Virus record (IMG/VR): IMGVR_UViG_3300027708_000012
Coordinates: 124,001-188,000 of that record
Reading direction: 5' to 3' (one strand)
DNA: 64,000 nt
The position numbers and the translations under genes were made by a program. This document shows, piece after piece, positions 6,370 to 20,404 of the stretch (positions are counted from its first letter, which is position 1; each line of letters begins with the position of its first letter). The notes below the pieces were generated by a model. The model saw only the letters and a program-made list of their open reading frames with translations. It made no database searches and was not told the origin of the DNA.

Positions 6370-6981
6370 ATGCAGACTAAAGACGCAACTGGAATTCATA
6401 TAGAAGGGCATATTAAGATATTTGACCCCGTTTCGAAAGAAATTTATATTGATAAACGTAATGCCATTCATTATGAAAACATGAGTATTGCCTTGGCACA
6501 GTCGTTGTCTAACAGTAATACTGGCGGATTTATATATGAAATGAATTTTGGAAACGGCGGCACAGCGGTGGATCCTACAGGGATTATCACATATCTCACA
6601 CCAAATTCAAGCGGATCTAATGCTAGTTTGTATAATAAAACTTATAGTAAGGTAGTAGATCCTAGTAGCAGCACTAATACCGACCCTACAAGGAATTTTA
6701 CAGAAGTAAGACATGCAACAGGTACAAACTATACCGATATTTTTGTAACTTGCTTACTAGACTACGGCGAACCTAGCGGCCAAACAGCATTTGACACTAC
6801 TTCAGATATTAATAGTACATTCACTTTTGATGAATTGGGATTAAGAAGTTATAGTACTGTAGGCGAAAGTTTATTATTAACTCATGTTGTATTTCATCCT
6901 GTATTAAAAAGTCTTAACAGACTAATACAGATTGATTATACTGTACGTATTCAGAGTTTAACTGGCCTTGTGTCAGTTTAA
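6370..6981 (+). CDS. Virion structural protein (baseplate/tail associated)
   Basis: 203 aa ORF within the structural operon, preceded by a late-type motif. Confidence 0.55.
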   Translation: MQTKDATGIHIEGHIKIFDPVSKEIYIDKRNAIHYENMSIALAQSLSNSNTGGFIYEMNFGNGGTAVDPTGIITYLTPNSSGSNASLYNKTYSKVVDPSSSTNTDPTRNFTEVRHATGTNYTDIFVTCLLDYGEPSGQTAFDTTSDINSTFTFDELGLRSYSTVGESLLLTHVVFHPVLKSLNRLIQIDYTVRIQSLTGLVSV

Positions 6982-6992
6982 GGAGTTAGCAA

Positions 6993-9200
6993 ATGACTTA
7001 TCAAGTTCAATTTACTGATTCTACTAATCCTAATAAACCTCCGATTATAGTTGCTGACGGAACAATAAACACTGATTCTACTAGTATTGGATTCGTAGGC
7101 CAGTCATATCCGGGGTATGCTCCAATTGTTGCTGACAATTTATTGCACATGCTAGAAAATTTTGCAGCACCGTTTGCTCCCTCAAACCCTGTTCAAGGAC
7201 AGCTTTGGTACGATACTAATTCGAGCACTTTGAAAATTTTTGATAGTACTAACTGGGTAACAGCAGGAAATTTAAAAAAAGGTACAGCAGCACCTGCTGT
7301 ATCTAGTAGTTTACAAGGCGACTTGTGGTCGAATACTTCAACAAATCAGTTGTATTTGTTTACAGGAAGTAATTGGACACTAGTTGGCCCACAATTTAGT
7401 ATAGGCACACAAACAGGTCCTAGCGTAGATGCCATTATTGATAGTAATAACGTTAGTCATTATGTTATTTCTATGTATGCAAATAACAATATTATTTCTA
7501 TAATCAGTAAAGAAAAGTTTATTCCAAAAGCAGCCATTCCTGGATTTAGTATTATAAATGAAGGTATTAATCTTAGTTCAATAGACAGTACTAGTACTAC
7601 TAATCCAACTAGATTTTGGGGAATTGCTCAGCAAGCAGATGCACTATATTACAATGGCATTACTGTTCCTGCTACAAATTTTTTAAGAAGTGATATAGTA
7701 AGTACTACAGCTAATCAGTTAAACATTCAGTCAGACTCTGGTTTAGGTGTCGGATCTAATTTAGGTTTTATTATAGACATTGAAAATGGTAGTCCTACAT
7801 TAAAATCTACTCTAGCTGGTACAAATCTTAATATTAAATTAACAACTTCCGGCGGAGTAACTAATACTGTAATACATGCCGATTCTTCAGGAAAAGTAGG
7901 TATAAACACACTTGCACCATCTTCTGCACTAGATGTTTCAGGACTAATTACGGCCAGTACAGGATTAAAAATTACAGGAACTACTGACAGTAGTTACTCT
8001 CCGGGTACATTATTTACAACAGCAACAGGTAGTATAGTTACGCAGGGCGGTTTGAGTGTTGCTAAAAAATCAAATTTTGGCGGAGATGTTACTAGCTTTG
8101 GACAATACATCCTAAATCGCCTAGATGCTAATGCAAGCCCAATTGCTGCATCAGTTATTGTGCCAGGATATTCATCTAATACAGCTGAAGCAACTCTTTT
8201 AAATATTCCTAATATTGTAAATCCACTATACGATATAGGAACAGAAACACGACGTTTTAGAAATATATTTGCTACTAACTTTTCTGGAAATTTTACAGGA
8301 ACGTTTACTGGTACATTAGAAGGAAGTGCTAACGGAACAGCCGCCGCATTATCTAGTCCTACCGTTTTTAGTTTAATTGGAGATGTAACTAGTAATAGTG
8401 TTAGTTTTAACGGACAGTCTGAAACAGGCACAGCAATATTCAGTACATCAATTAATCAGAATTTTATCTCAGGTAAAACTGCAGCAACTGATTCATTAAT
8501 AAACGACGAATTTTTAGTATATCGATCTGGAACAGGTTTACTAAAAATGTCAAAAGCTGTGCTTACTAATCATATAGCAACTATTCCAGTTGGTACAATT
8601 TTGCCTTTTGCGGGAACATCTATACCTACAGGATATTTACTATGCGACGGCTCAGAAGTATTAATAGCAACATACTCGGATTTATATTCAGTTATTGGGT
8701 ATGCTTATAAAGCACCGGGATTATTAGACGGTCTTGGCACGTTTGGACTTCCAGATCTACGTGGGCGTTTCCCGCTAGGAGCTGATAATATGAATAATAA
8801 TATTACAGTTCCGAGTAAGGACGGTTCAGGAAATCAAGTAAGCACTTCTTTAGACCTAAACGGTAACCCTAGCTTGGTTGCACATCGTGTTAACGAGATA
8901 ACGGCTACAATAATCGGACAAGGTAATACTTACGCAACAGAATCAAAAACATTAGAAAATAGTAATTTACCAGATCATACACATAGTTTAAATGACGGTA
9001 CTAGTCAATTCTATGCTGTTAATACTCCTACAGAAGCAAGCGATAGAAATGCCATTCCAAACAAGGGTACATCTGGTGAAAGTGGAACAGGATCTGGTAT
9101 TTTAAACACAGGTAGTGTGAATGGAACTACAGGCCTACCTGTAAATATAATGAATCCTTATCAGACTATTAACTATATAATTTTTACTGGTATAATCTAA
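6993..9200 (+). CDS. Tail fibre/baseplate protein with C-terminal tail-collar domain
   Basis: Collar motif IPVGTILPFAG...GYLLCDG...LPDLRGRFPLG. N-terminal LENFA...P..GQLWYD module shared with the next two genes. AAGGAG SD. Confidence 0.8.
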   Translation: MTYQVQFTDSTNPNKPPIIVADGTINTDSTSIGFVGQSYPGYAPIVADNLLHMLENFAAPFAPSNPVQGQLWYDTNSSTLKIFDSTNWVTAGNLKKGTAAPAVSSSLQGDLWSNTSTNQLYLFTGSNWTLVGPQFSIGTQTGPSVDAIIDSNNVSHYVISMYANNNIISIISKEKFIPKAAIPGFSIINEGINLSSIDSTSTTNPTRFWGIAQQADALYYNGITVPATNFLRSDIVSTTANQLNIQSDSGLGVGSNLGFIIDIENGSPTLKSTLAGTNLNIKLTTSGGVTNTVIHADSSGKVGINTLAPSSALDVSGLITASTGLKITGTTDSSYSPGTLFTTATGSIVTQGGLSVAKKSNFGGDVTSFGQYILNRLDANASPIAASVIVPGYSSNTAEATLLNIPNIVNPLYDIGTETRRFRNIFATNFSGNFTGTFTGTLEGSANGTAAALSSPTVFSLIGDVTSNSVSFNGQSETGTAIFSTSINQNFISGKTAATDSLINDEFLVYRSGTGLLKMSKAVLTNHIATIPVGTILPFAGTSIPTGYLLCDGSEVLIATYSDLYSVIGYAYKAPGLLDGLGTFGLPDLRGRFPLGADNMNNNITVPSKDGSGNQVSTSLDLNGNPSLVAHRVNEITATIIGQGNTYATESKTLENSNLPDHTHSLNDGTSQFYAVNTPTEASDRNAIPNKGTSGESGTGSGILNTGSVNGTTGLPVNIMNPYQTINYIIFTGII

Positions 9201-9201
9201 A

Positions 9202-11106
9202 ATGAGCTATAATATAACCCTTACCGACGGAACAAGTTTAACTGTTATTTCAGACGGCCAGATTGATCAAATCCATACCGATCTTACATTAATAGGAAAA
9301 AACACTACAAGTTACGGTGTGTTTTTTAACGATAATTTTGTAAGATTATTAGAAAATTTTGCAAACACCAGTCAGCCAAATCATCCGTTAATAGGACAAC
9401 TATGGTTTGACACTGCAGAAAGTAGACTTAAAGTCTATAACGGAACTTCGTTTACTACTACCAATGGTACAATAGTTTCTCCTACTAGTCCAGTTAGTAT
9501 CTCTAAAGGAGATATTTGGATTGATAGTACAAATGGACAATTATGGTTTAATGATGGCCTTTCTAATAAACTTGCTGGCCCGTCTTACTCAACCATGCAA
9601 GGCGAAAGCGGCTTGTTTACAAAAACAAGATTAGATGTTAATGGCGCAGAACATATTATTGTAGAATTAAAAGTTGGAAGTACAACTCTTGGTATTTTTA
9701 GCAAGGATACTTTTATTCCTGCTGATTCAATTCCGGGATTTAGTACAACAGCAAAATTTTTAGGATACCAAGTTGGCACAGTTTTAACAGTTACTTCAAT
9801 AACCAGCGGACAATTAGGAGTAGGGCAAACTATATTTGGTAATATTATATTTGCTAATACACAAATAACAGAACAGTTAACAGGCGATACTGGCAATGTT
9901 GGTACATATGCTGTTAGTAATAGTAACATAGTAGGTAGTGTACAATCTCCAGTAGCATTAAGTTCAACAAATGATATAATTAAAGTTGGATTTAACACAA
10001 GCGCCTACCCTGGTATTGTTTTTAACACAGTCGTTAGTAAGGCACAACAATTATTAGCTGCTGACGGTAGCTTGAAGACAGCTGAAAGTTTTCTTTCTTC
10101 TCAAGAAAATTCTTCTACAACAGGTACACTAGTAATACAGAACGATAATCCGCTGGTATTAGGAGGTTATTCAGATTTTGAATTAGATATTAATAGATCG
10201 ACAAATACTATTATAATGCAGTCGACTGTTATAAATCAAAATTTTCAAATTAATCTTAAAAGCGGAGGAGCAACAGCAACTCCGATTTATGTAAACGCAC
10301 AGGATAAAAAAGTAGGAATTTTTACCACAACACCAACTGCTATGTTGGATGTTGCTGGTAGTGTTAAAATTCAAGGAGATCTTACTGTACAAGGTAATGT
10401 TACTACAGTGAGTAGTACTTCAGTAAGCGTAGCAGATAAAAATATTGTCTTAGGTAATACAGCTACACCAACGGATACTACAGCTAGTGGCGGTGGAATA
10501 ACTCTAGCAGGATTGACATCAAAAATTATTGCATGGGATTCTGTAACTAACAACGGATCAACTAACACAGGATATTGGAATTTTACAGATAACATCAACG
10601 TTGGAAGTAGTTCGTTAGGATACTATATTAATGGCCAAAATGTATTGAGTTTAACAAGTTTAGGTAGCACTATAACTAGCGCACCAGGGCTTACTAGTGT
10701 AGGAATATTAACTAGTGTTCAAGCAGGAAATTTGTCCATTGTTGGTTCTACGATTTCTTATACTAGTATACAAACTTCAGGAGATGTTAAACTTCAACCA
10801 AAAGGTACAGGATCAGTAGATGTTAGTAGTACAAAAATTATTAATCTTGCAACTCCTACAAACGGAACAGATGCAACTAATAAATCATATGTAGATTCTT
10901 CTATAAAATTAGCACCTCTAGGTATAAGTTTAAATACTACCGGACAAACTGATACTACAATTGGTACATTACTATTAGCTACTATTTTCCCTGTAGCAGA
11001 GCATCCAAATGGTACAAAATGCAGAGTACAGTGCTCAGATTTAACAATAAAATTGTATGAAGTAGCGGGCGGTGTGTGGAGTTGGCAACAAAATATTCCT
11101 TTCTAA
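9202..11106 (+). CDS. Tail fibre-like protein (paralogous N-terminus)
   Basis: Contains LIGKN..YG...DNFVRLLENFA...GQLWFD and fibre-type motifs (VGIFTTTPTAMLDVAG, DATNKSYVD). Confidence 0.7.
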   Translation: MSYNITLTDGTSLTVISDGQIDQIHTDLTLIGKNTTSYGVFFNDNFVRLLENFANTSQPNHPLIGQLWFDTAESRLKVYNGTSFTTTNGTIVSPTSPVSISKGDIWIDSTNGQLWFNDGLSNKLAGPSYSTMQGESGLFTKTRLDVNGAEHIIVELKVGSTTLGIFSKDTFIPADSIPGFSTTAKFLGYQVGTVLTVTSITSGQLGVGQTIFGNIIFANTQITEQLTGDTGNVGTYAVSNSNIVGSVQSPVALSSTNDIIKVGFNTSAYPGIVFNTVVSKAQQLLAADGSLKTAESFLSSQENSSTTGTLVIQNDNPLVLGGYSDFELDINRSTNTIIMQSTVINQNFQINLKSGGATATPIYVNAQDKKVGIFTTTPTAMLDVAGSVKIQGDLTVQGNVTTVSSTSVSVADKNIVLGNTATPTDTTASGGGITLAGLTSKIIAWDSVTNNGSTNTGYWNFTDNINVGSSSLGYYINGQNVLSLTSLGSTITSAPGLTSVGILTSVQAGNLSIVGSTISYTSIQTSGDVKLQPKGTGSVDVSSTKIINLATPTNGTDATNKSYVDSSIKLAPLGISLNTTGQTDTTIGTLLLATIFPVAEHPNGTKCRVQCSDLTIKLYEVAGGVWSWQQNIPF

Positions 11107-11113
11107 ACCGACA

Positions 11114-11119
11114 TAAATA
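11114..11119 (+). promoter_or_regulatory. Late-type promoter element (CA)TAAATA
   Basis: Intergenic, 21 nt upstream of the ATG at 11141. Confidence 0.5.
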
Positions 11120-11140
11120 TACAAACAAGGAAAAGGCGCA

Positions 11141-12661
11141 ATGTCATACACGATAAATCATTACAACGGTTCATTATTAACAGTAGTATCGGAAGGAACC
11201 GTAGATACTAGCACAGATCTTACATTAATTGGTAAGAATTATGCTGGATATGGCACTGCTCAAAACGATAATTTTGTATGGTTATTAGAAAATTTTGCAA
11301 ATACTACTGAGCCTCCTTCCCCATTAACTGGTCAAATATGGTTTGATAGTGCCAATCTTAAATTAAAATTTTATGACGGTAGCAAATTTAGAACAACTAG
11401 TAGTACCGAAGTCAGTGCCATACCTCCAACTGGACTAACTCTTGGAGATTTATGGTTTGATACTACAACGGATCAGCTATATGCATACAATGGCAACCTA
11501 TCAGATCCTTTTACATTAATTGGACCTCAAGGTGTTGCAGGAGAAGGACTTACTGAAATGCAATCAATTTCAGTAAAAGACACTTCTAATGCTTCGCATC
11601 CAATTATACAAGCGGTTATTAACGGTACGGTAGTGTTTATAATTAATGCAGATAGTGCATTTACACTTAACTCTATTAATCCTATTAACGGATTTGATAG
11701 AATTGAACAAGGTCTTACTCTTGCATATACCCGACAAGCAGATAACGGCATAACAAATAGTAGTACAGCACATAGATGGTGGGGAACAGCAACTAATTCT
11801 GATAGATTAAACGGCCTTCCTTCTTCTAGTTATGTACAAAGTGATAGTCCTATTTTTATGGGTACAGCACACTTTCCTGATACTGGATATACTGTTGGCG
11901 GATCGACTGGATTAGTTAATCCTAAACTAAAAATTAGTATTGGCAATTCTGGAATCACGCCAATCGTTGAAAATGTTGTTAATGATACAATAGCATTTCG
12001 AACTACATCGGGCGCAGGAAAACTATATCCTTTAACAATTAAAGGTAATGATTTATTACCAGGCGGCCCTTTAGCAATTACTAATTTTACTTCTGATAGC
12101 ACAAATAATATAGGTAGTTCCACAGCACGATGGTCTACTGTGTGGGCTGTAAATTTTAACGGAACTGCTACAAATTCAAATTATTTACTGGTCGGTGGAA
12201 GTCCGTCCGCTGCGTCTGTAGCAAGTGCTCCAAATACTATTGTTGCAAGAAATAGTAATAACGATATATTTGCTAATGTTATAAACGGTACATCTACAAG
12301 TGCAAACTATGCTGACTTGGCTGAAAAGTACCTTGCTGATAAAAAATATGATATTGGTACAGTTGTATCAGTTGGCGGAACAGCTGAAATAACCGAATCT
12401 AAAAACGGAGATCTTCCTATAGGTGTAATTAGTGAAAATCCTGCATATAAAATGAATGCAACGTTAGTAAACGGTGTTTATGTTGCATTAAAAGGCCGTG
12501 TTCCTGTAAAAGTTGAAGGTCCAGTTGTCAAAGGTCAGAGATTAGTTGCAAGTAATAATGGTTGCGCACAAGTTGCAACAAATACGGTAGATACTTTTGC
12601 TATAGCATTAGAAACTAACGACACAACTTCAATTAAATTAGTAGAATGTGTTATACTTTAA
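11141..12661 (+). CDS. Tail fibre-like protein with C-terminal intramolecular-chaperone/autocleavage-like domain
   Basis: Same N-terminal module as the two previous genes. C-terminal 'YADLAEKY...GTVV...IGVIS..PAY.MN...VALKGRVPVKV' is typical of phage fibre C-termini. Confidence 0.7.
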   Translation: MSYTINHYNGSLLTVVSEGTVDTSTDLTLIGKNYAGYGTAQNDNFVWLLENFANTTEPPSPLTGQIWFDSANLKLKFYDGSKFRTTSSTEVSAIPPTGLTLGDLWFDTTTDQLYAYNGNLSDPFTLIGPQGVAGEGLTEMQSISVKDTSNASHPIIQAVINGTVVFIINADSAFTLNSINPINGFDRIEQGLTLAYTRQADNGITNSSTAHRWWGTATNSDRLNGLPSSSYVQSDSPIFMGTAHFPDTGYTVGGSTGLVNPKLKISIGNSGITPIVENVVNDTIAFRTTSGAGKLYPLTIKGNDLLPGGPLAITNFTSDSTNNIGSSTARWSTVWAVNFNGTATNSNYLLVGGSPSAASVASAPNTIVARNSNNDIFANVINGTSTSANYADLAEKYLADKKYDIGTVVSVGGTAEITESKNGDLPIGVISENPAYKMNATLVNGVYVALKGRVPVKVEGPVVKGQRLVASNNGCAQVATNTVDTFAIALETNDTTSIKLVECVIL

Positions 12662-12692: not shown

Positions 12693-14864
12693 ATGACTGT
12701 TTCTATTGTTTCATTTACAGGATATATTAATAACGGCACAAACGGAGTTGTAGGAACTACATTAACAGTTTCAGTAATATCTTCGGGAAGAATTGCGTTA
12801 GGCATGGCTATTTCAGATGATGCCAATACAATTAGTGCCAATACACGTATTATATCTCAACTAACTGGAAGCACTGGAAGTACAGGAACTTATCAAGTAA
12901 CTGTTAGTCAGTCATCAGGAACAAGTTCTGCCAAATTAAATATTACTGGAACGTCTGCTGGAAAGATACTTGCAAGTGACTATAACGTATTACAATCAAA
13001 ATTGGCACTAGTAATGTCTACGGGATTTGGAAGATACGGTTACGGACAAGTATCTCCAAGATATACTAGTTCTCAAATATCAGGCAATCCTATTATTACC
13101 GCCGATCAATGGTCAAAACTAAGAGATGATACGATCAAGGCATATTATCATCAAGGTTCAATTGGTAATTTAACAATACCAATTGTTCCGGTAAAAACCA
13201 ATACTATTACTGGAACAGATTATGCACTTTATGCAAATTTAATACAGTCAGTTTATAATAATTTAAATACTACACCACCTGCTGGACAAGCTAGTCTTGT
13301 GACATTCCCGCAAGCGGTTCGAACTAGTTCTTGGAATGGTACAGTATATCATACAGTAACACTAACATTTCCTACTAGAAATGACGCCAGGTACTACTTT
13401 AACTCTGGTAGTAATTTACAATTTAGTGCTAGTTTGATTAATTATCCTGGGTACCCAGGATATACACAAGGACCAGATGCTTCTTTTGCAAAAGATAGTG
13501 ATTGGAATATGTTGTTATTTAATATGAAAAAAATTACATTTGATATCAACGGCACAACTTCCACAGGATCTTATACAACCATTGGTTCTAATATTGGTTT
13601 TTATAATCTTACTACTACTCCGCAGAATATTTTCCAAAAGAAAACAGCTAGCCCGTCTTATACTAATAATCAGTATGATATATTGGCTAGTATAGATGCT
13701 ACTGGAAGAATTTTAACTTTTAGCATACAATTTGCAGACCTTTCTGGAGGTAATCCTGATGAAAGTGTTGAAGGCACATTAACCAGCACAGTTCAAGCAT
13801 ATTATTCTACTGGTAGTAATGTTCAAGTTAGCTTGCCTAGTTATAGCTCTACAATTACAGGCGGAGTAATAGTAGCTCCCTCGTCAACATACTTTATTAC
13901 ACCCGTTACAAATAGTGTCAATGAAGGCAGTAGTTTAACAATTAATGTAACAGGATCATTAATTATTGATGATACTTACTATTGGACCATTAATAATAAC
14001 ACAACAAGTTCAGCTGATTTTTCAGCAACATCTGGATCATTTACTATTACAAGTAATTCTGGATCGTTTGTAATATCGCCAACAGCTGATAGCTTAACTG
14101 AAGGTGCGGAAACATTTACAGTATCAATTCGTTCTACTAGTATTACTGGATCGGTACTGGCTACAAGTTCAACTATTACTATTAATGATACTAGTGTTAC
14201 TCCTCCACCGCCACCTCCAGCAGTAACGACTTTAAGTTATGATGTATCATCAGTTAATGAAGGTAGTTCAGTTACACTAACGGCAAGAAATGTTGCCGGA
14301 GCGGACGGGACTTATTATTGGACTATATTACATGGAACTACATCTAGTGCTGATTTTTCAGCAACATCTGGATCATTTACAGTATCAAGCGGAACAGGAA
14401 CATTTAGTGTAACGCCAACAGCTGACAATTTAACTGAAGGTGCAGAAACATTCCAAGTGCAAATTAGAAATGTTTCAATTAGCGGGTCAATTCTAGCAAC
14501 TTGTTCTCTCATAACAATTAACGATACTAGCTTAAATCCTCCTGCGGTTATAACTGCACACGGATTTAGTTCTGGAAATTCCGCAGTTGAAGGCAATAGT
14601 ATAACATACAGTGGTACATTTGGTGGTACTATAATTGGTAGTCCGTATGCTATTACAGTTGGCACTGCAATAAGTTCTCCTCCGTATAGTTCAACAATTG
14701 TTTCAGCTGGTGGAACTTTTACTACTAGCCCTCAAACAATTTCAGTTACTTTCACAGTACCGGCAATATCATCAAATACATCACCGTACAATAGATTATA
14801 TGCGGCGGTAACCGGCGCTTACGGCCCAAATGGAAATGATGATATACCAGTATTACCAGTATAA
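12693..14864 (+). CDS. Virion protein with two Calx-beta/Ig-like repeats joined by a Pro6 linker
   Basis: Two ~110 aa repeats (SVNEGSS...ADFSATSGSFT...PTAD.LTEGAETF...ITINDTS) separated by TPPPPPPA. Confidence 0.65.
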   Translation: MTVSIVSFTGYINNGTNGVVGTTLTVSVISSGRIALGMAISDDANTISANTRIISQLTGSTGSTGTYQVTVSQSSGTSSAKLNITGTSAGKILASDYNVLQSKLALVMSTGFGRYGYGQVSPRYTSSQISGNPIITADQWSKLRDDTIKAYYHQGSIGNLTIPIVPVKTNTITGTDYALYANLIQSVYNNLNTTPPAGQASLVTFPQAVRTSSWNGTVYHTVTLTFPTRNDARYYFNSGSNLQFSASLINYPGYPGYTQGPDASFAKDSDWNMLLFNMKKITFDINGTTSTGSYTTIGSNIGFYNLTTTPQNIFQKKTASPSYTNNQYDILASIDATGRILTFSIQFADLSGGNPDESVEGTLTSTVQAYYSTGSNVQVSLPSYSSTITGGVIVAPSSTYFITPVTNSVNEGSSLTINVTGSLIIDDTYYWTINNNTTSSADFSATSGSFTITSNSGSFVISPTADSLTEGAETFTVSIRSTSITGSVLATSSTITINDTSVTPPPPPPAVTTLSYDVSSVNEGSSVTLTARNVAGADGTYYWTILHGTTSSADFSATSGSFTVSSGTGTFSVTPTADNLTEGAETFQVQIRNVSISGSILATCSLITINDTSLNPPAVITAHGFSSGNSAVEGNSITYSGTFGGTIIGSPYAITVGTAISSPPYSSTIVSAGGTFTTSPQTISVTFTVPAISSNTSPYNRLYAAVTGAYGPNGNDDIPVLPV
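14013..14380 (+). repeat. 32-bp exact direct repeat (14013-14044 and 14349-14380) marking an intragenic domain duplication
   Basis: gctgatttttcagcaacatctggatcatttac occurs twice, 336 nt (112 codons) apart. Confidence 0.85.
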
Positions 14865-15433
14865 TGTCTTTTGAGTTGTTAAACGAAACACCGAGGATAG
14901 TCTATTATCATAACATACTTTCTGATAGTGAGTGTAATTATGTTATTGATACCGCTGACAATTTTCAAAAATCCGCAGGCTATGATTTTGCAACGAAACA
15001 ATCTAAATTTACCAAGTGGAGAACTAGTAGCAATTATTTTGACCACGATAACAAGTTTAAGTATATTACTGAAAAAGCTGCAGAGTTATCAACCCATCCG
15101 CTTATTAACATTGAGCCACCGCAAATAATAAAGTACGAAATTGATGAGTTTTATAAACCTCATTACGACTTTTTTAACTTTCCGCCCGAAATAATTTCTA
15201 CAGATAACGACAGAATTGGTACTATTATTTTTTATTTAAATGATGGGTTTACCGGAGGAGAAACAAATTTTCCTAAATTGGATATTACTGTTCGTCCTAG
15301 AAAGGGATCTGCATTATTTTTTGAATATAATTATTCTAAAATAACCAATCATTTAACATTACACGGCGGCATGCCAGTTGTACACGGCACAAAATATATT
15401 GCTACTTCTTGGATTAGAAGCAACAAGTTCTAA
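14864..15433 (+). CDS. Prolyl 4-hydroxylase-like 2OG-Fe(II) oxygenase
   Basis: Motifs FYKPHYDFF (HxD), TIIFYLND..GGETNFP, LHGGMPV (distal His) and KYIATSWIR (2OG-binding Lys). TAATG-coupled to the upstream gene. Confidence 0.85.
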   Translation: MSFELLNETPRIVYYHNILSDSECNYVIDTADNFQKSAGYDFATKQSKFTKWRTSSNYFDHDNKFKYITEKAAELSTHPLINIEPPQIIKYEIDEFYKPHYDFFNFPPEIISTDNDRIGTIIFYLNDGFTGGETNFPKLDITVRPRKGSALFFEYNYSKITNHLTLHGGMPVVHGTKYIATSWIRSNKF

Positions 15434-15460
15434 AAGTTATAAAATAATCATCAGCAGCCA

Positions 15461-15489
15461 TTGACAAGATAATTAAAGTAGTGTATTAT
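15461..15489 (+). promoter_or_regulatory. Sigma70-like promoter
   Basis: TTGACA-17 nt-TATTAT upstream of 15513. Confidence 0.7.
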
Positions 15490-15512
15490 AAACATTACGG
15501 AGTTATCTGCCC

Positions 15513-15863
15513 ATGGATGAAAGAATTGAAAAAGCGTTTGAAGTTGCCAATTATATGGCAACACTTAGTAATCAACGCCGCATTATATTAGAAGAATACA
15601 ATCACTCATTGATATACTATATCAATGGTGCTACATTTAAACTTACACCATCTCTTATTAGTTTTGTAAAAACATTAATTGATCTTGGAAATACAGAAAA
15701 TGTTGTTTTAATTGATGACAATAATTTTCCAGCACTAGTAGAAGACTTAGATGTTTTTCTAACTAACATAACTTCAAAATATTTAGAATCTGTAAAAACG
15801 TATGCAGATGCGTTTAACGATTTACGAGCCAAACGTAAAATTGCAGGTATTGTTGAGTTATGA
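15513..15863 (+). CDS. Hypothetical protein
   Basis: 116 aa ORF with GGAG SD; ATGA overlap with the next gene. Confidence 0.6.
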   Translation: MDERIEKAFEVANYMATLSNQRRIILEEYNHSLIYYINGATFKLTPSLISFVKTLIDLGNTENVVLIDDNNFPALVEDLDVFLTNITSKYLESVKTYADAFNDLRAKRKIAGIVEL

Positions 15864-16708
15864 GTCAGGGCATTGTAATTTTTGCTCAAAATAATGCAGA
15901 TGTTGATTATATAAAATTAGCTACATTTTCAGCTAATCAGGCAAAACAATATCTTGATTTGCCCGTGAGTTTAATTACAGATAGCAGAGGTTGGTTAGAA
16001 AAAAGCCAGCCAAATCATCCATTTGATCAAATTATTGATGTTGAATATACATCAGCATCTCAGCGCAAATCGTTTTTTGACGGCTCACTAACATCCAAAA
16101 ATCTTGAGTGGAGAAACTTTGCACGTAATCTTGCATATGATTTAACACCCTATGACACTACACTAGTCATTGATAGCGATTATATTATCAACAGCGATAA
16201 TTTAAAACTAGCATTTGCACGGGATATAGATTTTCAGATATATTCAAAAAGTATGGATTTAGCATCTTGGAGAAATACAGAAGAATTTGATCGTGTTAAT
16301 ATGTATAGTATTCCATTTTACTGGGCCACGGCATTTATATTTCAAAAAAATGAAATTACTAAATCATTTTTTAATTTAATTGCTTATATTAAATCTAATT
16401 GGAATTATTATCGTATACTTTATAATATAGATTCTACGTTATTTCGAAATGATTATGCTTTTAGTATTGCTATACATATTATGAACGAAAAAGGATTGAA
16501 TTCTTTTGCTATGGAGTTACCAGGAAGTATGGTATATACTAAAGATAAAGATCTATTAGTTTCTTCAGTAGATAATAAAATGAAATTTCTATTAGAAAAG
16601 AAAGACTATCCAGGCGAATATATTTTAGCTAAGACACAAGGTTTAGATATTCATGTAATGAATAAATTTAGTCTAAGCAGATTTATTGACGGAGGTTCAG
16701 GTGTCTAA
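15860..16708 (+). CDS. GT-A fold glycosyltransferase-like protein
   Basis: 'TPYDTTLVIDSDY' DxD motif and N-terminal GIVIFA strand. Paralog of the next gene. Confidence 0.7.
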   Translation: MSQGIVIFAQNNADVDYIKLATFSANQAKQYLDLPVSLITDSRGWLEKSQPNHPFDQIIDVEYTSASQRKSFFDGSLTSKNLEWRNFARNLAYDLTPYDTTLVIDSDYIINSDNLKLAFARDIDFQIYSKSMDLASWRNTEEFDRVNMYSIPFYWATAFIFQKNEITKSFFNLIAYIKSNWNYYRILYNIDSTLFRNDYAFSIAIHIMNEKGLNSFAMELPGSMVYTKDKDLLVSSVDNKMKFLLEKKDYPGEYILAKTQGLDIHVMNKFSLSRFIDGGSGV

Positions 16709-17531
16709 AGGATTTTTAGTACTAGCTCAAAATACAGATTCTGACGATTATATTCAGCAAGCCTATGCTTTAGCGTTGAGTATTCGTTGGAGTCAAAAAA
16801 CTATTACTAATATTTCATTAGTAACTGATGATATTGTTCCAAAAGAATACCAGTCTGCATTTGATAAAATTATTCCAATACCGTTTGGTAGTCCGGAAAG
16901 TGTCAGTCTTTATAGAGCAGAAAATCGTTGGAAACTCTACTATGCCAGTCCCTATGACGAAACTATTGTACTAGATACAGACATGTTAGTATTGGAAGAT
17001 TTAAGTTCTTGGTGGAAATATTGTGAAAATTATGATATACGATATTGTAATAGAATACAAAATTATAAATTAGAAGCAGTAAACGATAAATTACATAGAA
17101 AAACATTTATTGCTAATAAGCTAACAAGCCCTTATTCGGCTTTACATTACTTTAAAAAATCAAACTCTGCTTACGAATTCTATAAAGTTTTAGAATTTGT
17201 CTGCAATAACTGGGAATGGTGTTGGGATAAATTTGCTCCTGAAGAATATCAAAAATGGTTAAGTATGGATTTAGCTGTTGCAGTAGCAATTGAAATAACT
17301 GGTGCTTACGATGTTGTGGATGCAAACAATCCAATGGAATTTGTACATATGAAAACACATCTACAAGGATGGAAGACTTCATCAAATTTGTGGCAAGATT
17401 TTGTACTTACAAACTTTACCAATGAGCTAACCGTAGCTAATATAAAACAACAAAAGTTGTTTCATTACATAGAAAAAGATTTTTTATCTGAACATATTTT
17501 ATCAAGACTACAGGAGCTAGCACATGGCTAA
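16701..17531 (+). CDS. GT-A fold glycosyltransferase-like protein
   Basis: 'SPYDETIVLDTDM' DxD motif. Likely GTG start at 16701 after GGAGG. Confidence 0.7.
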   Translation: MSKGFLVLAQNTDSDDYIQQAYALALSIRWSQKTITNISLVTDDIVPKEYQSAFDKIIPIPFGSPESVSLYRAENRWKLYYASPYDETIVLDTDMLVLEDLSSWWKYCENYDIRYCNRIQNYKLEAVNDKLHRKTFIANKLTSPYSALHYFKKSNSAYEFYKVLEFVCNNWEWCWDKFAPEEYQKWLSMDLAVAVAIEITGAYDVVDANNPMEFVHMKTHLQGWKTSSNLWQDFVLTNFTNELTVANIKQQKLFHYIEKDFLSEHILSRLQELAHG

Positions 17532-18156
17532 ACGCTCTCAAAAACAAAAAATCGTAGAGGTAGTTGAGCCTAAATTCTATGCTCATTATGACGGAATGAC
17601 TAGGAATATCTTCAGCGTAAACAATCATAAAATTGAAGGGTGGCCGCATTTTGTGGAAATTTCGTTTCTCGAGTATGAAAGATTAGTTACTGGAAAAGAT
17701 GAGTTTACTGATTTTCACATAGGAACTGTTATAGCTGTTGACGGAACCGCTTCTTTAGGATTAGTTTCTAAAAAAGTTATACAAGAACATAATTTTAAAA
17801 ATAGATTACTATATTGGATTGAGCGTGAAACAGAAAATGCCGACATGGAAATTCATTATGATGCATACAATTCCCAGTGGGTATTTTTAGTCTCAGACGA
17901 ATTTAGACAACGATACTATTCTAATCAACTACCAATAAGTTCAATTTCTTTTTTTATCACGCTAGGAAAAGATCCTAACTTTTTACTACGTGTAATTGAT
18001 ATAGATTTAAAATCAATAGTGTCAGATAAAATTTTAATAAATTTTGATAGTAAGTGGGAATCAAATATTGATTTAATTGCAATTACTTCCAATCTATCAA
18101 CTATTACATACTCTCTTAAAATTTGGAAAATATATGAGCAAGATCAAAGTAATTGA
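17524..18156 (+). CDS. Hypothetical protein
   Basis: 210 aa ORF with AGGAG SD, overlapping its neighbours within the operon. Confidence 0.55.
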   Translation: MAKRSQKQKIVEVVEPKFYAHYDGMTRNIFSVNNHKIEGWPHFVEISFLEYERLVTGKDEFTDFHIGTVIAVDGTASLGLVSKKVIQEHNFKNRLLYWIERETENADMEIHYDAYNSQWVFLVSDEFRQRYYSNQLPISSISFFITLGKDPNFLLRVIDIDLKSIVSDKILINFDSKWESNIDLIAITSNLSTITYSLKIWKIYEQDQSN

Positions 18157-19033
18157 ACAAGACATAATATTTCTCAGCTATGATGAACCTAATGCTGAAA
18201 AGAACTATGCCGATTTATTAGCAAAAGTGCCATGGGCTAAACGTGTGCATGGAGTTAAGGGTAGTGATGCGGCACACAAGGCTTGTGCAGCGCAATGCGA
18301 AACAGAATACTTTGTTACAGTAGACGGCGACAACATTATCGATCCTGCATTTTTAGAAGTTGAAATTGACTTAGATGAATTAGGTCTAACTTCTAATCAT
18401 GTGTTTAGTTGGTGCGGAAAAGTTCATGTTAATCACTTGATGTACGGCAACGGTGGACTTAAAATGTGGACCCCTGCGTTTGTTAACAATATGAAGACTC
18501 ATGAAAATTCTGATCCTAATGACACTAAGGGTCTAGTAGAATTTTGTTTTGATGATCTGTATTATCAATTTGACGAAAACTATTCAGAGAGCTTTACCAA
18601 TGCCAGCCCATTTCAAGCCTTCAGAGCAGGATTCCGTGAAGGTGTAAAGATGTCGTTGGATCAAGGTGCAAAAGTTCAAGACATTAGTAAAATATTTTGG
18701 AAAAACTATCATAGGTTATTGATTTGGTCTAACATTGGTGCCGATGTTACTAATGGACTTTGGAGTATGTATGGTGCAAGAGAAGGCGCCTATCTAACTA
18801 ATTGTACAGATTGGGACTATACTAATGTTCGTGATTTTGATTATTTGACTCAACAGTGGGAAGACAAATACAGCAAGGTAACTGAAAAAATGTTGCCCTA
18901 CGAAATTATGGGTTTAGGTGAAACACTTAAACACGAATGCGGTTTGGAAATCACAGACGTTGATTCAACCGGAAGCAAATTTTTTAAAACGGTGTTTAAC
19001 AACTCGCCCCGAACTCTTAGGAAGAAATTATAA
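18134..19033 (+). CDS. Glycosyltransferase-like protein (GT-A, DGD motif)
   Basis: 'IIFLSYDEP...VHGVKG...AH...FVTVDGDN' and 'YGNGGLK'. Likely start at MSKIKV (18134). Confidence 0.65.
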   Translation: MSKIKVIEQDIIFLSYDEPNAEKNYADLLAKVPWAKRVHGVKGSDAAHKACAAQCETEYFVTVDGDNIIDPAFLEVEIDLDELGLTSNHVFSWCGKVHVNHLMYGNGGLKMWTPAFVNNMKTHENSDPNDTKGLVEFCFDDLYYQFDENYSESFTNASPFQAFRAGFREGVKMSLDQGAKVQDISKIFWKNYHRLLIWSNIGADVTNGLWSMYGAREGAYLTNCTDWDYTNVRDFDYLTQQWEDKYSKVTEKMLPYEIMGLGETLKHECGLEITDVDSTGSKFFKTVFNNSPRTLRKKL

Positions 19034-19749
19034 TGTACGATATAGTTTATATTACATACAAAGAAGAAATTCCTCCAAGTTATTATATTGAAGAATTTAT
19101 AAAGAAATTCCCGTATCATAAAACACATTGGGTGCGGGGTATTAAAGGTATTCATAATGCTCACAAAGAAGCAGCCAAGCGAGTATTTTCTAGTATGTTT
19201 TATGTAGTTGATGCAGATGCAAAATTATTGCCTAATTTTAAATTTGATATTAAATTAGACCCCAGCGAAGAAGATATTGTACATGTGTGGCGTAGTATTA
19301 ATCCAGTTAATGGATTAGAATACGGCTTCGGCGGCATCAAATTATTGCCAACTGAATTAACAAGAAATATGGATACTACTAGTGTTGATATGACTACTAG
19401 TATTAGTTCTAGATTTAAAATAATGCCAGATATTAGTAACATTACACAATTTAATATAGATCCACTTAGCACATGGCGTAGTGCATTTAGAGAATGTGTA
19501 AAATTAGCCAGTAGAATCATTCCCGGACAAGATAACAGTCAATCAGAACAGAGGCTACATGCATGGATACACTTTGGCGGCAACGAGCCTTTTGGTGAAT
19601 ATTCAAAGGGAGGTGCGAGTGCGGGAAATTGGTTTGGGACCACCTATAAAGATGATCCCGAAATGCTAGCTAAGATTAACGATTATGATTGGCTAGAGCA
19701 TCAGTTCAATGCACACATTGAACAATTTCCGCCAGAAACTTTTAAATAA
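19033..19749 (+). CDS. Glycosyltransferase-like protein (paralog of previous, DAD motif)
   Basis: 'VRGIKGIHNAH...FYVVDADA...YGFGGIKL...WRSAFRECVKL' aligns by eye to the previous gene. Confidence 0.65.
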   Translation: MYDIVYITYKEEIPPSYYIEEFIKKFPYHKTHWVRGIKGIHNAHKEAAKRVFSSMFYVVDADAKLLPNFKFDIKLDPSEEDIVHVWRSINPVNGLEYGFGGIKLLPTELTRNMDTTSVDMTTSISSRFKIMPDISNITQFNIDPLSTWRSAFRECVKLASRIIPGQDNSQSEQRLHAWIHFGGNEPFGEYSKGGASAGNWFGTTYKDDPEMLAKINDYDWLEHQFNAHIEQFPPETFK

Positions 19750-20404
19750 GATCTTTAGCTAAAGGAAAAATCTCAGCTATCACTCGAGCACATGCAATAG
19801 CAACTTCTTGGTGTTCTTTTTGTGTGCCATTTGCACTACGCAGTTCAATAAAGTGAATCCAACTACGTAGTGTACCGTTCATATAAATTCTACTTTCGAT
19901 TAGGCCTTCGGGCAATACAGCCCGGGCCTGCTCTTTTGCTATACCATTAGCGATAGCCCATTCGTATTCCCGTTTGGCAGCATAGATAACTCGTTGCTGA
20001 GCTCTGTACCAATCGTTTTGTAACATTGTATCATCCACTTCGACGCTGTTCTGTCTGTTTTTTGGATCTTGAAGTCTTGCTTCTCTTGTAACAAACGACA
20101 AGTCTCGAGTAGGGTCAGCATATCGCTGACTGAATTCTTGGAAGCTGAAACTTCTGTGTCGCAAGATTTGTCGGGCAATATCTCTTGTAGTTGTGATTTC
20201 AATACAGGCGGAGACCATTTCAAGTGGGCTCCAGTGCTGGTGTTTGACCAAGTACTTGATGAGTTTGTCTGATGTCTCTGTGTTAAGTTGGTTGCTGGGA
20301 TTGGACACACGGGCGCAATACGCAATGAGTTCCTGCGCATCCGTGATTCCAAGATTTGCAAATTCTGCTGTTGGTTGTGAGTAACTGAGTAGCTGAACAT
20401 TCAT
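19742..20404 (-). CDS. thyX: Flavin-dependent thymidylate synthase
   Basis: ThyX signature RHRSFSFQEFSQRY, plus HWSPLEM and EQARAVLP. Confidence 0.95.
   Translation of the reverse strand: MNVQLLSYSQPTAEFANLGITDAQELIAYCARVSNPSNQLNTETSDKLIKYLVKHQHWSPLEMVSACIEITTTRDIARQILRHRSFSFQEFSQRYADPTRDLSFVTREARLQDPKNRQNSVEVDDTMLQNDWYRAQQRVIYAAKREYEWAIANGIAKEQARAVLPEGLIESRIYMNGTLRSWIHFIELRSANGTQKEHQEVAIACARVIAEIFPLAKDLI

What the first reader, a model, noticed from the sequence alone, without database searches (positions are those of the whole stretch)
12693..19749. Prolyl hydroxylase next to a poly-Pro virion protein, followed by four glycosyltransferases: candidate virion hydroxyproline/glycan decoration
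Seen: a P4H-like gene is TAATG-coupled to a virion protein with a PPPPPP linker (14202-14219). Next comes an operon of two paralogous pairs of DxD GT-A enzymes, all at the end of the Ser/Thr-rich tail-fibre module. Established: P4Hs of this type hydroxylate Pro-rich peptides, hydroxyproline is an O-glycosylation site in plants and algae, and some phages glycosylate their virions. Inference: post-translational hydroxylation and glycosylation of tail appendages. Caveat: a sigma70 promoter at 15461 separates the P4H from the GT genes, so the two parts may be independent.
Basis: partly seen in the sequence, partly recalled or inferred. Interest (0 to 1): 0.65.

Follow-up and report, generated by a model that had tools for sequence, protein, structure and literature searches.

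The report
Phage prolyl hydroxylase beside poly-proline fibre
A freshwater jumbo phage carries a true prolyl 4-hydroxylase gene fused in expression to a tail-fibre-like protein with poly-proline linkers, and next to it a separate, lineage-wide operon of four glycosyltransferase-like enzymes; the first pairing looks functional, but the two modules do not depend on each other.

Summary
fib723 (12693-14864) holds two 67%-identical Calx-beta-like domains joined by PPPPPP (14202-14219) and overlaps by TAATG a 189-aa gene whose best solved relatives are all prolyl 4-hydroxylases (E 1e-36), with the catalytic residues kept.

Among about 65 related phage loci, this P4H occurs almost only behind fibre variants that carry extensin-like Pro linkers (7 of 8 P4H types). 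Only 1 of 57 loci without the P4H has such a fibre. That amounts to 2-3 evolutionary events, and there is one exception each way.

The downstream genes form a six-gene operon, not four: o116, gtA, gtB, o210, gtC, gtD. It sits behind a sigma70-type promoter (15461-15489) that is conserved in nearly all relatives.
- gtA/gtB have a GT8-like fold (Z 15-16) with an invariant DxD.
- gtC/gtD form a new family with a GT-A/NDP-sugar-transferase N-domain (Z about 10) and an invariant DxD. Their glycosyltransferase role is likely, not proven.

This operon is present in every relative, including Ralstonia phage RsoM2USA, whether or not the P4H or poly-Pro is there. Hydroxyproline-linked glycosylation is therefore not supported. 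Virion Pro hydroxylation is plausible and untested. The glycan acceptor is unknown.

The parts
6993..12661 (+). Three tandem tail-fibre-like genes (735, 634 and 506 aa) that open the fibre module
   Evidence: They share an N-terminal domain (phrog_15511/14394). The 735-aa protein has a Phage Tail Collar domain, PF07484, E 7.6e-18. The 506-aa protein has a Peptidase_G2/intramolecular-chaperone C-terminus. Their S+T content is 21-25%.
12693..14864 (+). fib723, the last fibre-module protein. It has a conserved core (aa 91-390) plus a lineage-specific C-terminal extension.
   Evidence: The core is homologous to the roughly 300-aa proteins at this position in about 60 relatives and to RsoM2USA_355. 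S+T is 30%. Calx-beta and Ig matches are weak and below cut-off.
13890..14201 (+). Calx-beta-like domain, repeat 1
   Evidence: 67% identical to repeat 2, E 4e-41.
14202..14219 (+). PPPPPP interdomain linker, the candidate P4H substrate
   Evidence: Six Pro codons with mixed usage. It lies exactly between the two repeats.
14220..14537 (+). Calx-beta-like domain, repeat 2
14864..15433 (+). Prolyl 4-hydroxylase-family 2OG-Fe(II) oxygenase (189 aa), coupled to fib723 by a TAATG overlap
   Evidence: PF13640 at 57 bits. PDB 3itq/5hv0 E 1e-36, with HxD, His and Lys aligned. H100, D102, H167 and K177 are invariant in orthologues. The overlap is confirmed.
15461..15489 (+). Sigma70-type promoter TTGACA-17-TATTAT of the o116-gtD operon
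   Evidence: 11 of 12 match. The hexamers, spacer and RBS are conserved upstream of o116 in most of 58 distinct relatives. It is the only such site on the + strand of the structural block.
15513..15863 (+). o116, the first gene of the operon. A phage-only protein of unknown function.
   Evidence: Conserved in all relatives and in RsoM2USA_354. Only viral hypothetical clusters match it. Exact RNA-library contigs lie at 15520-15732 and 15599-15777.
15860..16708 (+). gtA, a GT8-like retaining-type GT-A glycosyltransferase candidate (282 aa)
   Evidence: AF2 pLDDT 89.5. Glycogenin, LARGE1, UGGT and LgtC match at Z 14.6-15.8 over 190-221 residues. Foldseek probability 1.0. D105 and D107 are invariant. 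There is no PF01501 sequence match.
16686..17531 (+). gtB, a paralogue of gtA (281 aa)
   Evidence: BLASTP E 6e-7 over the full length, with DTD aligned to DSD.
17524..18156 (+). o210, a conserved operon protein of unknown function
   Evidence: Present in nearly all relatives. No family or Atlas match. An RNA-library contig lies at 17918-18139.
18137..19033 (+). gtC, a paralogue of gtD (298 aa from the conserved ATG)
   Evidence: BLASTP E 2e-16, with DGD aligned to DAD. It is 67-96% identical in relatives.
19033..19749 (+). gtD (238 aa). It has a GT-A/NDP-sugar-transferase N-domain plus a helical C-domain of a new family.
   Evidence: AF2 pLDDT 91. Residues 1-141 match GT2-type glycosyltransferases and sugar nucleotidyltransferases at Z 8-10.4. 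D60 and D62 are invariant across both paralogue families. The family has 1657 clusters at 50% identity.
19742..20404 (-). thyX, convergent with gtD. It marks the boundary of the module.
   Evidence: PF02511 E 4e-45. The same thyX/DUF2201/AAA neighbourhood flanks the glycan locus in the distant relative L138.

Best explanation
Two adjacent but separable modules.

Module 1, the fibre and its hydroxylase. fib723 is the last protein of the late tail-fibre block. In this sub-lineage it has gained a C-terminal extension of Calx-beta-like domains strung on poly-proline linkers. The translationally coupled P4H is made together with it. Using Fe(II), 2-oxoglutarate and O2, it hydroxylates prolines in those linkers. 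It probably also acts on the P11/P11/P9 linkers of a second, 783-aa fibre-like protein elsewhere in the genome. The result would be stiffer polyproline-II spacers, stabilised by hydroxyproline, that hold out the distal domains.
- Shown: the enzyme's family and catalytic residues, the gene coupling, and the co-occurrence.
- Inferred: the substrate and the effect.

Module 2, the glycosylation operon. A six-gene operon (o116, gtA, gtB, o210, gtC, gtD) has its own conserved sigma70-type promoter. It encodes soluble enzymes: two GT8-like and two GT2-like GT-A proteins. It is a core feature of the whole phage lineage. It most likely builds a short glycan on a phage-made acceptor, with the Ser/Thr-rich fibres the likeliest target. 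It does not require hydroxyproline.
- Shown: the folds, the DxD motifs, conservation, independence from the P4H, and sugar-nucleotide genes at the same locus in a relative.
- Inferred: the acceptor.
For: P4H identity.

Coupling and linker.

Co-occurrence of the P4H with Pro linkers:
- P4H orthologues are rare, only 10 clusters at E<1e-30 in 5.8 billion proteins.
- They lie directly after 486-1126-aa fibre variants with linkers such as PPPPPPYVA repeats and PPPPA repeats, in the window, L088, L008, L113, L110, L111 and L139.
- 56 of 57 assessable loci without the P4H have fibres with no Pro run of 4 or more. This includes long, 454-1047-aa variants.
- The naive Fisher p is 9e-8.
- The P4H tree is incongruent with the gtA+gtB tree. 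This suggests the fibre tip and the P4H move together as a cassette.

Module 2:
- Synteny is universal in 80 loci and in RsoM2USA.
- The promoter is conserved.
- Folds.
- No transmembrane segments.
- L138 carries a UDP-Glc/GDP-Man dehydrogenase, a DegT aminotransferase and a B12-radical SAM gene beside gtC/gtD homologues, in the same thyX neighbourhood.
- RsoM2USA has an unannotated epimerase/dehydratase in its tail block and a radical-SAM-like gene between gtC and gtD.
- In two lake metatranscriptome libraries, exact contigs cover o116 and o210 but not fib723 or the P4H.
- The genome has no ThyA-type hydroxymethylase and no TET/JBP.
Against: - There is no chemical evidence for hydroxyproline or for a glycan.
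- The co-occurrence reduces to about 2-3 independent events. Of three independent contrasts, two co-vary; sign test p 0.5.
- There is one exception each way. L141/L142 have the P4H behind a short 314-aa fibre without poly-Pro. L007 has a P12 linker fibre and no adjacent P4H. Both contigs are fragments.
- The same intergenic slot holds other 2OG oxygenases in relatives. It may therefore simply be an insertion hot spot.
- The physiological substrates of bacterial P4Hs are poorly known (own knowledge).
- gtC/gtD match glycosyltransferases and nucleotidyltransferases equally well by fold. No sequence model supports any of the four GTs.
- An early-type promoter is not what one expects for a late virion-decorating activity.
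- RNA-library contigs do not prove transcription.
Confidence: 0.55

Rival explanations
1. The P4H makes hydroxyproline in the fibre linkers. The four downstream GTs then O-glycosylate those Hyp residues, as in plant and algal hydroxyproline-rich glycoproteins or the Skp1 pathway.
For: The genes are adjacent. The linkers look extensin-like, with Pro runs followed by Tyr-Val. The solved matches of gtA include the Skp1 Hyp-glycan galactosyltransferase 6mw5, Z 14.2.
Against: The GT operon is unchanged in about 60 relatives and in RsoM2USA, which have neither the P4H nor poly-Pro. It has a separate, conserved promoter. Loci with the P4H carry no extra GT; the only extra gene is a second 2OG oxygenase. 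6mw5 is one of hundreds of equally good GT8 matches.
Confidence: 0.08
2. The P4H is an auxiliary enzyme that acts on a host or other phage protein, for example a translation factor. It sits behind the fibre gene only because that slot tolerates insertions.
For: The slot carries unrelated 2OG oxygenases and a DUF6065 gene in L011, and a second oxygenase in L008, L110, L113, L139 and L142. The genome has three more PF13640 paralogues. L141/L142 keep the P4H without a poly-Pro fibre. More distant homologues (42% identity) lie in non-structural contexts.
Against: The stop/start overlap with the fibre gene recurs in every orthologous locus with an extended fibre. The association with Pro-linker variants is near-exclusive, and long fibres without poly-Pro lack the P4H. 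The closest solved relatives act on Pro-rich or collagen-like peptides (own knowledge).
Confidence: 0.25
3. The GT operon does not decorate the virion. It glycosylates phage DNA, or remodels the host envelope or a host protein early in infection.
For: The promoter is host-type sigma70, like those of the non-structural regions. RNA-library contigs lie on the operon but not on the fibres. The operon abuts thyX. Phage GTs are best known for DNA modification (own knowledge; PMC12619734).
Against: The 94%-complete genome has no ThyA-family hydroxymethylase and no TET/JBP to make a glycosyl acceptor base. The TET control search rang nowhere, so that negative is weak. None of the six proteins has a transmembrane segment, unlike Gtr-type O-antigen modification. 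The position directly after the last fibre gene is kept across 34-44% protein identity, as far as RsoM2USA.
Confidence: 0.25
4. gtC and gtD are not glycosyltransferases. They are sugar-phosphate nucleotidyltransferases, or another kind of NDP-sugar-fold enzyme, that supply an activated sugar to gtA/gtB.
For: IspD-type cytidylyltransferases tie with GTs at Z about 10. No GT sequence model matches.
Against: A DxD is invariant at the end of the fourth strand in both paralogue families. That region aligns to the DxD stretch of the genome's own GT2, though not significantly. The sequence shows no N-terminal Gly-rich nucleotidyltransferase loop. Weak viral matches are mostly GT2. Relatives are strings of up to about nine DxD half-domains, which is unlike nucleotidyltransferases.
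Confidence: 0.2

Closest known systems
Bacillus anthracis P4H (PDB 3itq, 5hv0), Chlamydomonas P4H-1 (2jig) and PBCV-1 viral P4H (5c5t)
   Same: A small, single-domain 2OG-Fe(II) prolyl 4-hydroxylase with the HxD...H triad and the 2OG-binding Lys. The algal and chlorovirus enzymes act on Pro-rich repeats encoded by the same genome (own knowledge).
   Different: Here the gene overlaps a tail-fibre-like gene of a bacteriophage. The candidate substrate is a run of contiguous Pro used as an interdomain linker. Activity has not been tested.
Plant and algal hydroxyproline-rich glycoproteins (extensins)
   Same: Contiguous Pro runs next to Ser/Thr and Tyr-Val, such as the PPPPPPYVA repeats in L008, together with a P4H.
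   Different: No Hyp-arabinosyl or Hyp-galactosyl transferase family (GT95, GT77, GT31) is detectable. The neighbouring GT operon is independent of the P4H.
GT8 retaining glycosyltransferases (glycogenin, LgtC, LARGE1 xylosyltransferase domain, GlyE) and GT24 UGGT
   Same: gtA has the same GT-A fold over nearly its whole length, Z 14.6-15.8, and a DxD.
   Different: It does not match PF01501 at E 0.1. Identity to solved members is 9-17%. The donor and acceptor are unknown.
Virion glycosylation of mycobacteriophages (Freeman et al. 2023, cited in PMC12619734)
   Same: Phage-encoded GT genes that may decorate structural proteins.
   Different: There, glycans were shown on capsid and tail-tube C-termini. 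Here nothing has been shown chemically, the GT families differ, and the operon has an early-type promoter.
Ralstonia phage RsoM2USA ORFs 348-355 (MG752970; PMC8504454)
   Same: The only cultured phage with the same block: a fibre homologue, then o116, gtA, gtB, a small ORF, gtC and gtD, at 28-44% identity.
   Different: All of these are annotated as hypothetical. There is no P4H and no poly-Pro. There is an extra radical-SAM-like gene, and an epimerase/dehydratase lies nearby.

Membership tests
Prolyl 4-hydroxylase (2OG-Fe(II) oxygenase, PF13640/P4Hc) | Double-stranded beta-helix 2OG-oxygenase domain above the curated cut-off | tested here: met
   PF13640 at 57.1 bits against a cut-off of 27. 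phrog_61 E 8e-30.
Prolyl 4-hydroxylase (2OG-Fe(II) oxygenase, PF13640/P4Hc) | HxD...H iron triad and the Lys that binds 2-oxoglutarate | tested here: met
   These residues align with those of 3itq and 5hv0. H100, D102, H167 and K177 are invariant in four orthologues.
Prolyl 4-hydroxylase (2OG-Fe(II) oxygenase, PF13640/P4Hc) | Closest characterised relatives are prolyl 4-hydroxylases rather than other 2OG oxygenases | tested here: met
   All nine PDB hits are P4Hs; the best has E 1e-36 over residues 8-187. The three other paralogues in the genome are only distantly related.
Prolyl 4-hydroxylase (2OG-Fe(II) oxygenase, PF13640/P4Hc) | Hydroxylates peptidyl proline | not testable with these tools
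   This needs an enzyme assay or mass spectrometry.
GT8 glycosyltransferases (for gtA/gtB) | Sequence match to the family model PF01501 | tested here: not met
   No match in Pfam at E 0.1. No match in a six-frame search of the genome.
GT8 glycosyltransferases (for gtA/gtB) | GT-A fold closest to GT8 structures | tested here: met
   Glycogenin Z 15.8 (rmsd 3.3, 190 aligned), LARGE1 15.2, LgtC 14.6. GT24 UGGT also scores 14.8.
GT8 glycosyltransferases (for gtA/gtB) | DxD metal/NDP-sugar motif | tested here: met
   D105 and D107 are invariant in 36 sequences. They align with DTD of gtB.
GT8 glycosyltransferases (for gtA/gtB) | C-terminal His and Lys that complete the Mn/diphosphate site | tested here: inconclusive
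   H265 and K269 are invariant. They were not superposed on a solved active site.
GT2-type GT-A glycosyltransferases (for gtC/gtD) | Sequence match to GT2 models | tested here: not met
   No Pfam or NCBIfam hit. hhalign against the genome's own GT2 gives probability 1.8%.
GT2-type GT-A glycosyltransferases (for gtC/gtD) | GT-A fold | tested here: inconclusive
   Only residues 1-141 match, at Z 8-10.4. GTs (B4GALNT1, WrtF, ArnC, SpsA, SunS) tie with nucleotidyltransferases (IspD). The C-terminal helical half has no match.
GT2-type GT-A glycosyltransferases (for gtC/gtD) | DxD motif after the fourth strand | tested here: met
   D60 and D62 are invariant across 30 gtC and gtD sequences.
Hydroxyproline O-glycosylation system (plant/algal HRGP or Skp1 type) | Glycosyltransferases that depend on, and co-occur with, the prolyl hydroxylase | tested here: not met
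   The GT operon is present and unchanged in about 60 loci and in RsoM2USA, all without the P4H or poly-Pro.
Phage virion glycosylation (mycobacteriophage type) | Glycan covalently attached to a structural protein | not testable with these tools
   Only position and Ser/Thr richness speak for it: the operon sits directly after the last fibre gene, as far out as RsoM2USA.
Bacterial sigma70 promoter | -35 and -10 hexamers with a 17-nt spacer, conserved in relatives, upstream of an RBS and start codon | tested here: met
   11 of 12 match. 37 of 58 distinct upstream regions fit a strict pattern, and most of the others differ by one or two bases. The transcription start was not mapped.

The most novel reading that the evidence does not exclude
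A bacteriophage builds extensin-like tail appendages that contain hydroxyproline. A virus-encoded P4H converts poly-proline interdomain linkers of a distal fibre protein into Hyp-rich polyproline-II rods. The fibre tip and the hydroxylase are exchanged between phages as one cassette. In the boldest form, the neighbouring GT operon also glycosylates these appendages. This would be the first hydroxyproline modification shown in a phage virion.
Probability: 0.4. Interest if true: 0.8.

Novelty: new variant of a known kind. Interest (0 to 1): 0.58.

Why it matters
Hydroxyproline is a hallmark of eukaryotic structural proteins such as collagen and extensins. Among viruses it is known only from a chlorovirus enzyme assayed in vitro. 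My literature searches found no report of a phage P4H tied to a virion protein.

A phage enzyme dedicated to its own fibre linkers would add a new post-translational modification to phage structural biology. It would also give an assignable substrate to at least one member of the very common and so far unexplained viral 2OG-Fe(II) oxygenase genes.

Separately, the o116-gtD operon is a core feature of a widespread freshwater jumbo-phage lineage. gtA has 1553 clusters and gtD 3773 clusters at 90% identity. gtC/gtD define an uncharacterised enzyme family of 1657 clusters at 50% identity, which includes giant multi-domain forms. RsoM2USA offers a cultured system in which to test it.

Tried and rejected
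Searches that gave nothing for the four GT candidates, o116 and o210:
- Pfam, PHROGs and NCBIfam scans.
- PDB sequence and profile searches for gtA and gtD.
- Megablast of the region against cultured phages.
- hhalign of the gtD family against the genome's own GT2: not significant.
- Atlas look-up of o210: nothing. For o116: only viral hypothetical clusters.
- Pfam scan of eight multi-domain gtD relatives: only one radical-SAM fusion.

- Complex prediction for the P4H with the linker peptide. So there is no verdict on binding.

Other negative or uninformative results:
- A peptide scan for relatives of the 783-aa poly-Pro protein found only identical copies. The question 'are poly-Pro proteins common without the P4H' could therefore not be asked that way.
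- A search for the P4H elsewhere in the records of L007 and four other relatives was empty. Those records are only 11-21% complete.
- The 'moraphage' paper (PMC12619734) reports four core GT groups in another freshwater jumbo lineage. I could not show it is the same lineage, so I use it only as a parallel.

Ideas considered and set aside:
- The full promoter motif as a genome-wide regulatory element. It occurs only once in the genome.
- DNA glycosylation as the main reading.

Full report
**Source and setting**

The window is bases 124001-188000 of a 345,369-bp IMG/VR virus record, estimated 94% complete. GC content is about 35%. Near-identical DNA occurs in at least six freshwater metagenomes.

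The finding lies at the end of a + strand structural block:
- a protein of more than 2000 aa matching virion structural protein families;
- then four tandem fibre-like genes. The 735-aa one has a Phage Tail Collar domain. The 506-aa one has a Peptidase_G2/intramolecular-chaperone end.

Downstream, on the other strand, lie thyX, a DUF2201 metallopeptidase-like gene and an AAA ATPase.

**Check of the observation**

All stated features are present.
- The 723-aa ORF (12693-14864) contains PPPPPP, encoded by six mixed Pro codons at 14202-14219.
- This linker sits exactly between two roughly 100-aa domains that are 67% identical (E 4e-41). They give weak Calx-beta matches.
- The ORF's stop overlaps the start of the next gene as TAATG.
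- That 189-aa gene product matches PF13640. It aligns over its whole length with solved prolyl 4-hydroxylases: B. anthracis E 1e-36, Chlamydomonas 3e-20, PBCV-1 2e-14. The HxD, distal His and Lys are conserved.
- Only two genuine ORFs in the genome carry a Pro run of 6 or more. The other is a 783-aa fibre-like protein at genome 332223-334574, with P11, P11 and P9 linkers and the same 'NDTSxTPPPP' domain-linker junction.

**The downstream genes**

They form a tightly overlapping operon of six genes, not four: o116, gtA, gtB, o210, gtC, gtD. The two paralogous pairs are real. No sequence library recognises any of them.

*gtA and gtB*
- I built alignments from metagenomic homologues and predicted structures.
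- The gtA model (pLDDT 89.5) matches GT8 and GT24 retaining glycosyltransferases over almost its full length. Glycogenin scores Z 15.8, LARGE1 15.2, UGGT 14.8 and LgtC 14.6.
- Its DSD motif is invariant.
- It does not meet the GT8 sequence model.
- I therefore call it GT8-like by fold, not a member by sequence.

*gtC and gtD*
- The gtD model (pLDDT 91) matches known folds only in residues 1-141.
- Those matches are to the NDP-sugar-transferase fold at Z 8-10.4. GT2-type glycosyltransferases and IspD-type nucleotidyltransferases tie.
- Among viral models, its only full-length matches are two uncharacterised phage proteins. The weak remainder is mostly GT2.
- The DxD is invariant across both gtC and gtD families.
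- An exhaustive profile search found 1657 clusters at 50% identity. Many are 500-2164-aa proteins that carry several copies of the DxD-bearing half-domain before one complete domain. One is fused to a radical SAM domain.
- gtC/gtD are therefore a new family. A glycosyltransferase role is likely but not settled.

**Relatives: the GT operon**

A scan of viral contigs returned 80 loci.
- In all of them the order is: fibres, then a fib723 homologue, then o116-gtA-gtB-o210-gtC-gtD.
- The only cultured phage with the block is Ralstonia jumbo phage RsoM2USA, ORFs 355 to 348, at 28-44% identity. Its authors annotated all of these as hypothetical (PMC8504454).
- RsoM2USA has no P4H there. It has an unannotated NAD-dependent epimerase/dehydratase in the tail block and a radical-SAM-like gene between gtC and gtD.
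- In a more distant contig (L138), the same thyX/DUF2201/AAA neighbourhood flanks a larger island. It holds a UDP-glucose/GDP-mannose dehydrogenase, a DegT aminotransferase, a B12-radical SAM enzyme, a 1735-aa gtD-like protein and a gtC homologue.

This context supports glycan biosynthesis.

**Relatives: the promoter**

The intergenic region before o116 contains TTGACA-17-TATTAT.
- The hexamers, much of the spacer and the RBS are conserved in most of 58 distinct relatives.
- The genome uses many TTGACA-N17-TATAAT sites. They cluster in non-structural regions. This is the only one on the + strand of the structural block.
- The full 29-nt motif is unique in the genome.
- In two lake metatranscriptome libraries, exact contigs lie over o116 and the end of o210, and none over fib723 or the P4H. 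This fits separate, probably earlier or stronger, transcription. Contigs from an RNA library do not prove it.

**Relatives: the P4H and poly-proline**

*Fibres where the P4H is absent*
- In most relatives the fib723 homologue is about 300 aa. Only residues 91-390 of fib723 are conserved, and it has no Pro run of 4 or more.
- Long variants of 454-1047 aa without Pro runs also lack the P4H.

*Loci where the P4H is present*
- P4H orthologues are rare: 10 clusters at E<1e-30.
- They were found in the window, L088, L008, L113, L110, L111/L015 and L139.
- In each case they directly follow, with a stop/start overlap or a 1-3-nt gap, a 486-1126-aa fibre variant (L088 is cut at the contig end).
- In these variants the extension begins at the same '...MTGGT' junction. 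It is built of domains joined by Pro linkers, for example PPPPPPYVA repeats, PPPPA repeats and P9-P12 runs.

*Tally*
- 7 of 8 P4H-bearing locus types have such a fibre, against 1 of 57 assessable P4H-less loci.
- The naive Fisher p is 9e-8.

*Caveats*
- On a gtA+gtB tree the P4H needs only 3 changes and poly-Pro only 2. Of three independent contrasts, two co-vary, which cannot reach significance.
- L007 has a P12 fibre without an adjacent P4H.
- L141/L142 have the P4H behind a 314-aa fibre that stops at the junction.
- All of these contigs are fragments.

*Further observations*
- The P4H tree groups the window with L110/L111 (99/99). The GT tree groups it with L088, away from L110/L111. This indicates recombination of the fibre-tip/P4H region.
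- In several loci a second, distantly related 2OG oxygenase follows the P4H. Its best solved match is prolyl 3-hydroxylase 1, E 4e-5.
- L011 has a different oxygenase plus a DUF6065 gene in the same slot. The slot is therefore also a site of gene flux.

**Interpretation**

The best-supported reading is two modules.

*Module 1*
- It is a fibre-tip cassette: Calx-beta-like domains on poly-proline spacers plus a coupled P4H.
- Plant, algal and chlorovirus P4Hs hydroxylate contiguous or Pro-rich sequences, and Hyp stabilises the polyproline-II helix (own knowledge).
- The likely role is therefore to stiffen the spacers that display the distal domains.
- This is inferred. Nothing chemical is known.

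*Module 2*
- It is a lineage-wide operon of soluble enzymes with no transmembrane segments. It probably assembles a glycan.
- It exists unchanged without the P4H or poly-Pro, so it does not depend on hydroxyproline.
- Its acceptor is unknown.
- Conserved placement right after the last fibre gene, together with Ser/Thr-rich fibres, favours virion proteins.
- DNA glycosylation is disfavoured because the genome lacks a ThyA-family hydroxymethylase. TET/JBP was also not found, but that control search was uninformative.
- The early-type promoter keeps non-virion targets open.

**Novelty**
- P4H-like 2OG oxygenases are commonly annotated in aquatic phages, and a chlorovirus P4H is characterised. I found no report linking a phage P4H to a virion protein.
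- Phage GT clusters and virion glycosylation are known from mycobacteriophages (cited in PMC12619734).
- The finding is therefore a new variant of known kinds.
- It has two testable and fairly interesting parts: a probable hydroxyproline-bearing phage fibre, and an uncharacterised GT-A-like enzyme family.

**Limits**
- Two structure predictions covered one member of each paralogous pair. gtB and gtC are assigned through paralogy.
- o116 and o210 remain without any functional lead.
- The complex prediction and the Atlas fold library were unavailable.

Noticed in passing
G000:C1:332223-334574, minus strand (L133:4223-6574 -), outside the window: A second poly-Pro protein of 783 aa. It has P11, P11 and P9 linkers, a homologous Calx-beta-like domain (40% identity to fib723 aa 408-523), the same 'NDTSxTPPPP' junction, and LamG-like regions. 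It lies among other fibre-like genes. Only identical copies were found in viral contigs.
   Followed up: partly
L110:6536-7192, L008:about 4985-5656, L113:about 6530-7189, L139, L142: A second 2OG-Fe(II) oxygenase of 204-218 aa follows the P4H in many orthologous loci but not in the window. Its best solved match is prolyl 3-hydroxylase 1 (E 4e-5). This hints at a two-enzyme hydroxylation cassette.
   Followed up: partly
L011:569-1874: In one close relative, the slot between the fibres and the o116 promoter holds a different 2OG oxygenase and a DUF6065 gene instead of the P4H. The slot is a hot spot for oxygenase genes.
   Followed up: partly
Proteins P0250-P0317 (e.g. P0251 at 1735 aa, P0276 at 1524 aa, P0317 at 2164 aa): Giant relatives of gtC/gtD carry up to about nine tandem copies of the DxD-bearing half-domain (profile positions about 45-107) before one complete C-terminal domain. 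This is an unusual architecture with no Pfam annotation.
   Followed up: partly
L138:1-14085: A distant relative has an expanded sugar island at the same thyX-proximal position: UDP-Glc/GDP-Man dehydrogenase, B12-radical SAM, DegT aminotransferase, several unknown genes, a 1735-aa gtD-like protein and a gtC homologue.
   Followed up: partly
L005 (RsoM2USA MG752970): ORF358 at 225112-226089 and ORF349 at 217327-218748: Two genes annotated as hypothetical score as an NAD-dependent epimerase/dehydratase (PF01370, E 1e-52) inside the tail gene block, and as a radical-SAM-like protein between the gtC and gtD homologues.
   Followed up: no
window 15520-15777 and 17918-18139: Exact-match contigs from two independent lake metatranscriptome libraries cover o116 and the end of o210. 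Nothing is seen over the fibre or P4H genes.
   Followed up: partly
G000:C1: 17978-18190, 265687-265926, 266996-267238 (all minus strand); 261244-261855; 220852-221340; 287935-288405: The genome has three more PF13640 oxygenase paralogues that are only distantly related to the P4H. It also has two epimerase/dehydratase genes (one close to two of the oxygenases) and a canonical GT2 next to a metallophosphoesterase.
   Followed up: no
window 19742-19749: gtD and the convergent thyX gene overlap by 8 nt at their 3' ends. No terminator-like site is predicted between them.
   Followed up: no
G000:C1:185-7160, plus strand: Eleven near-consensus TTGACA-N17-TATAAT sites lie within 7 kb at the left end of the genome. 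This is probably the early promoter region.
   Followed up: no
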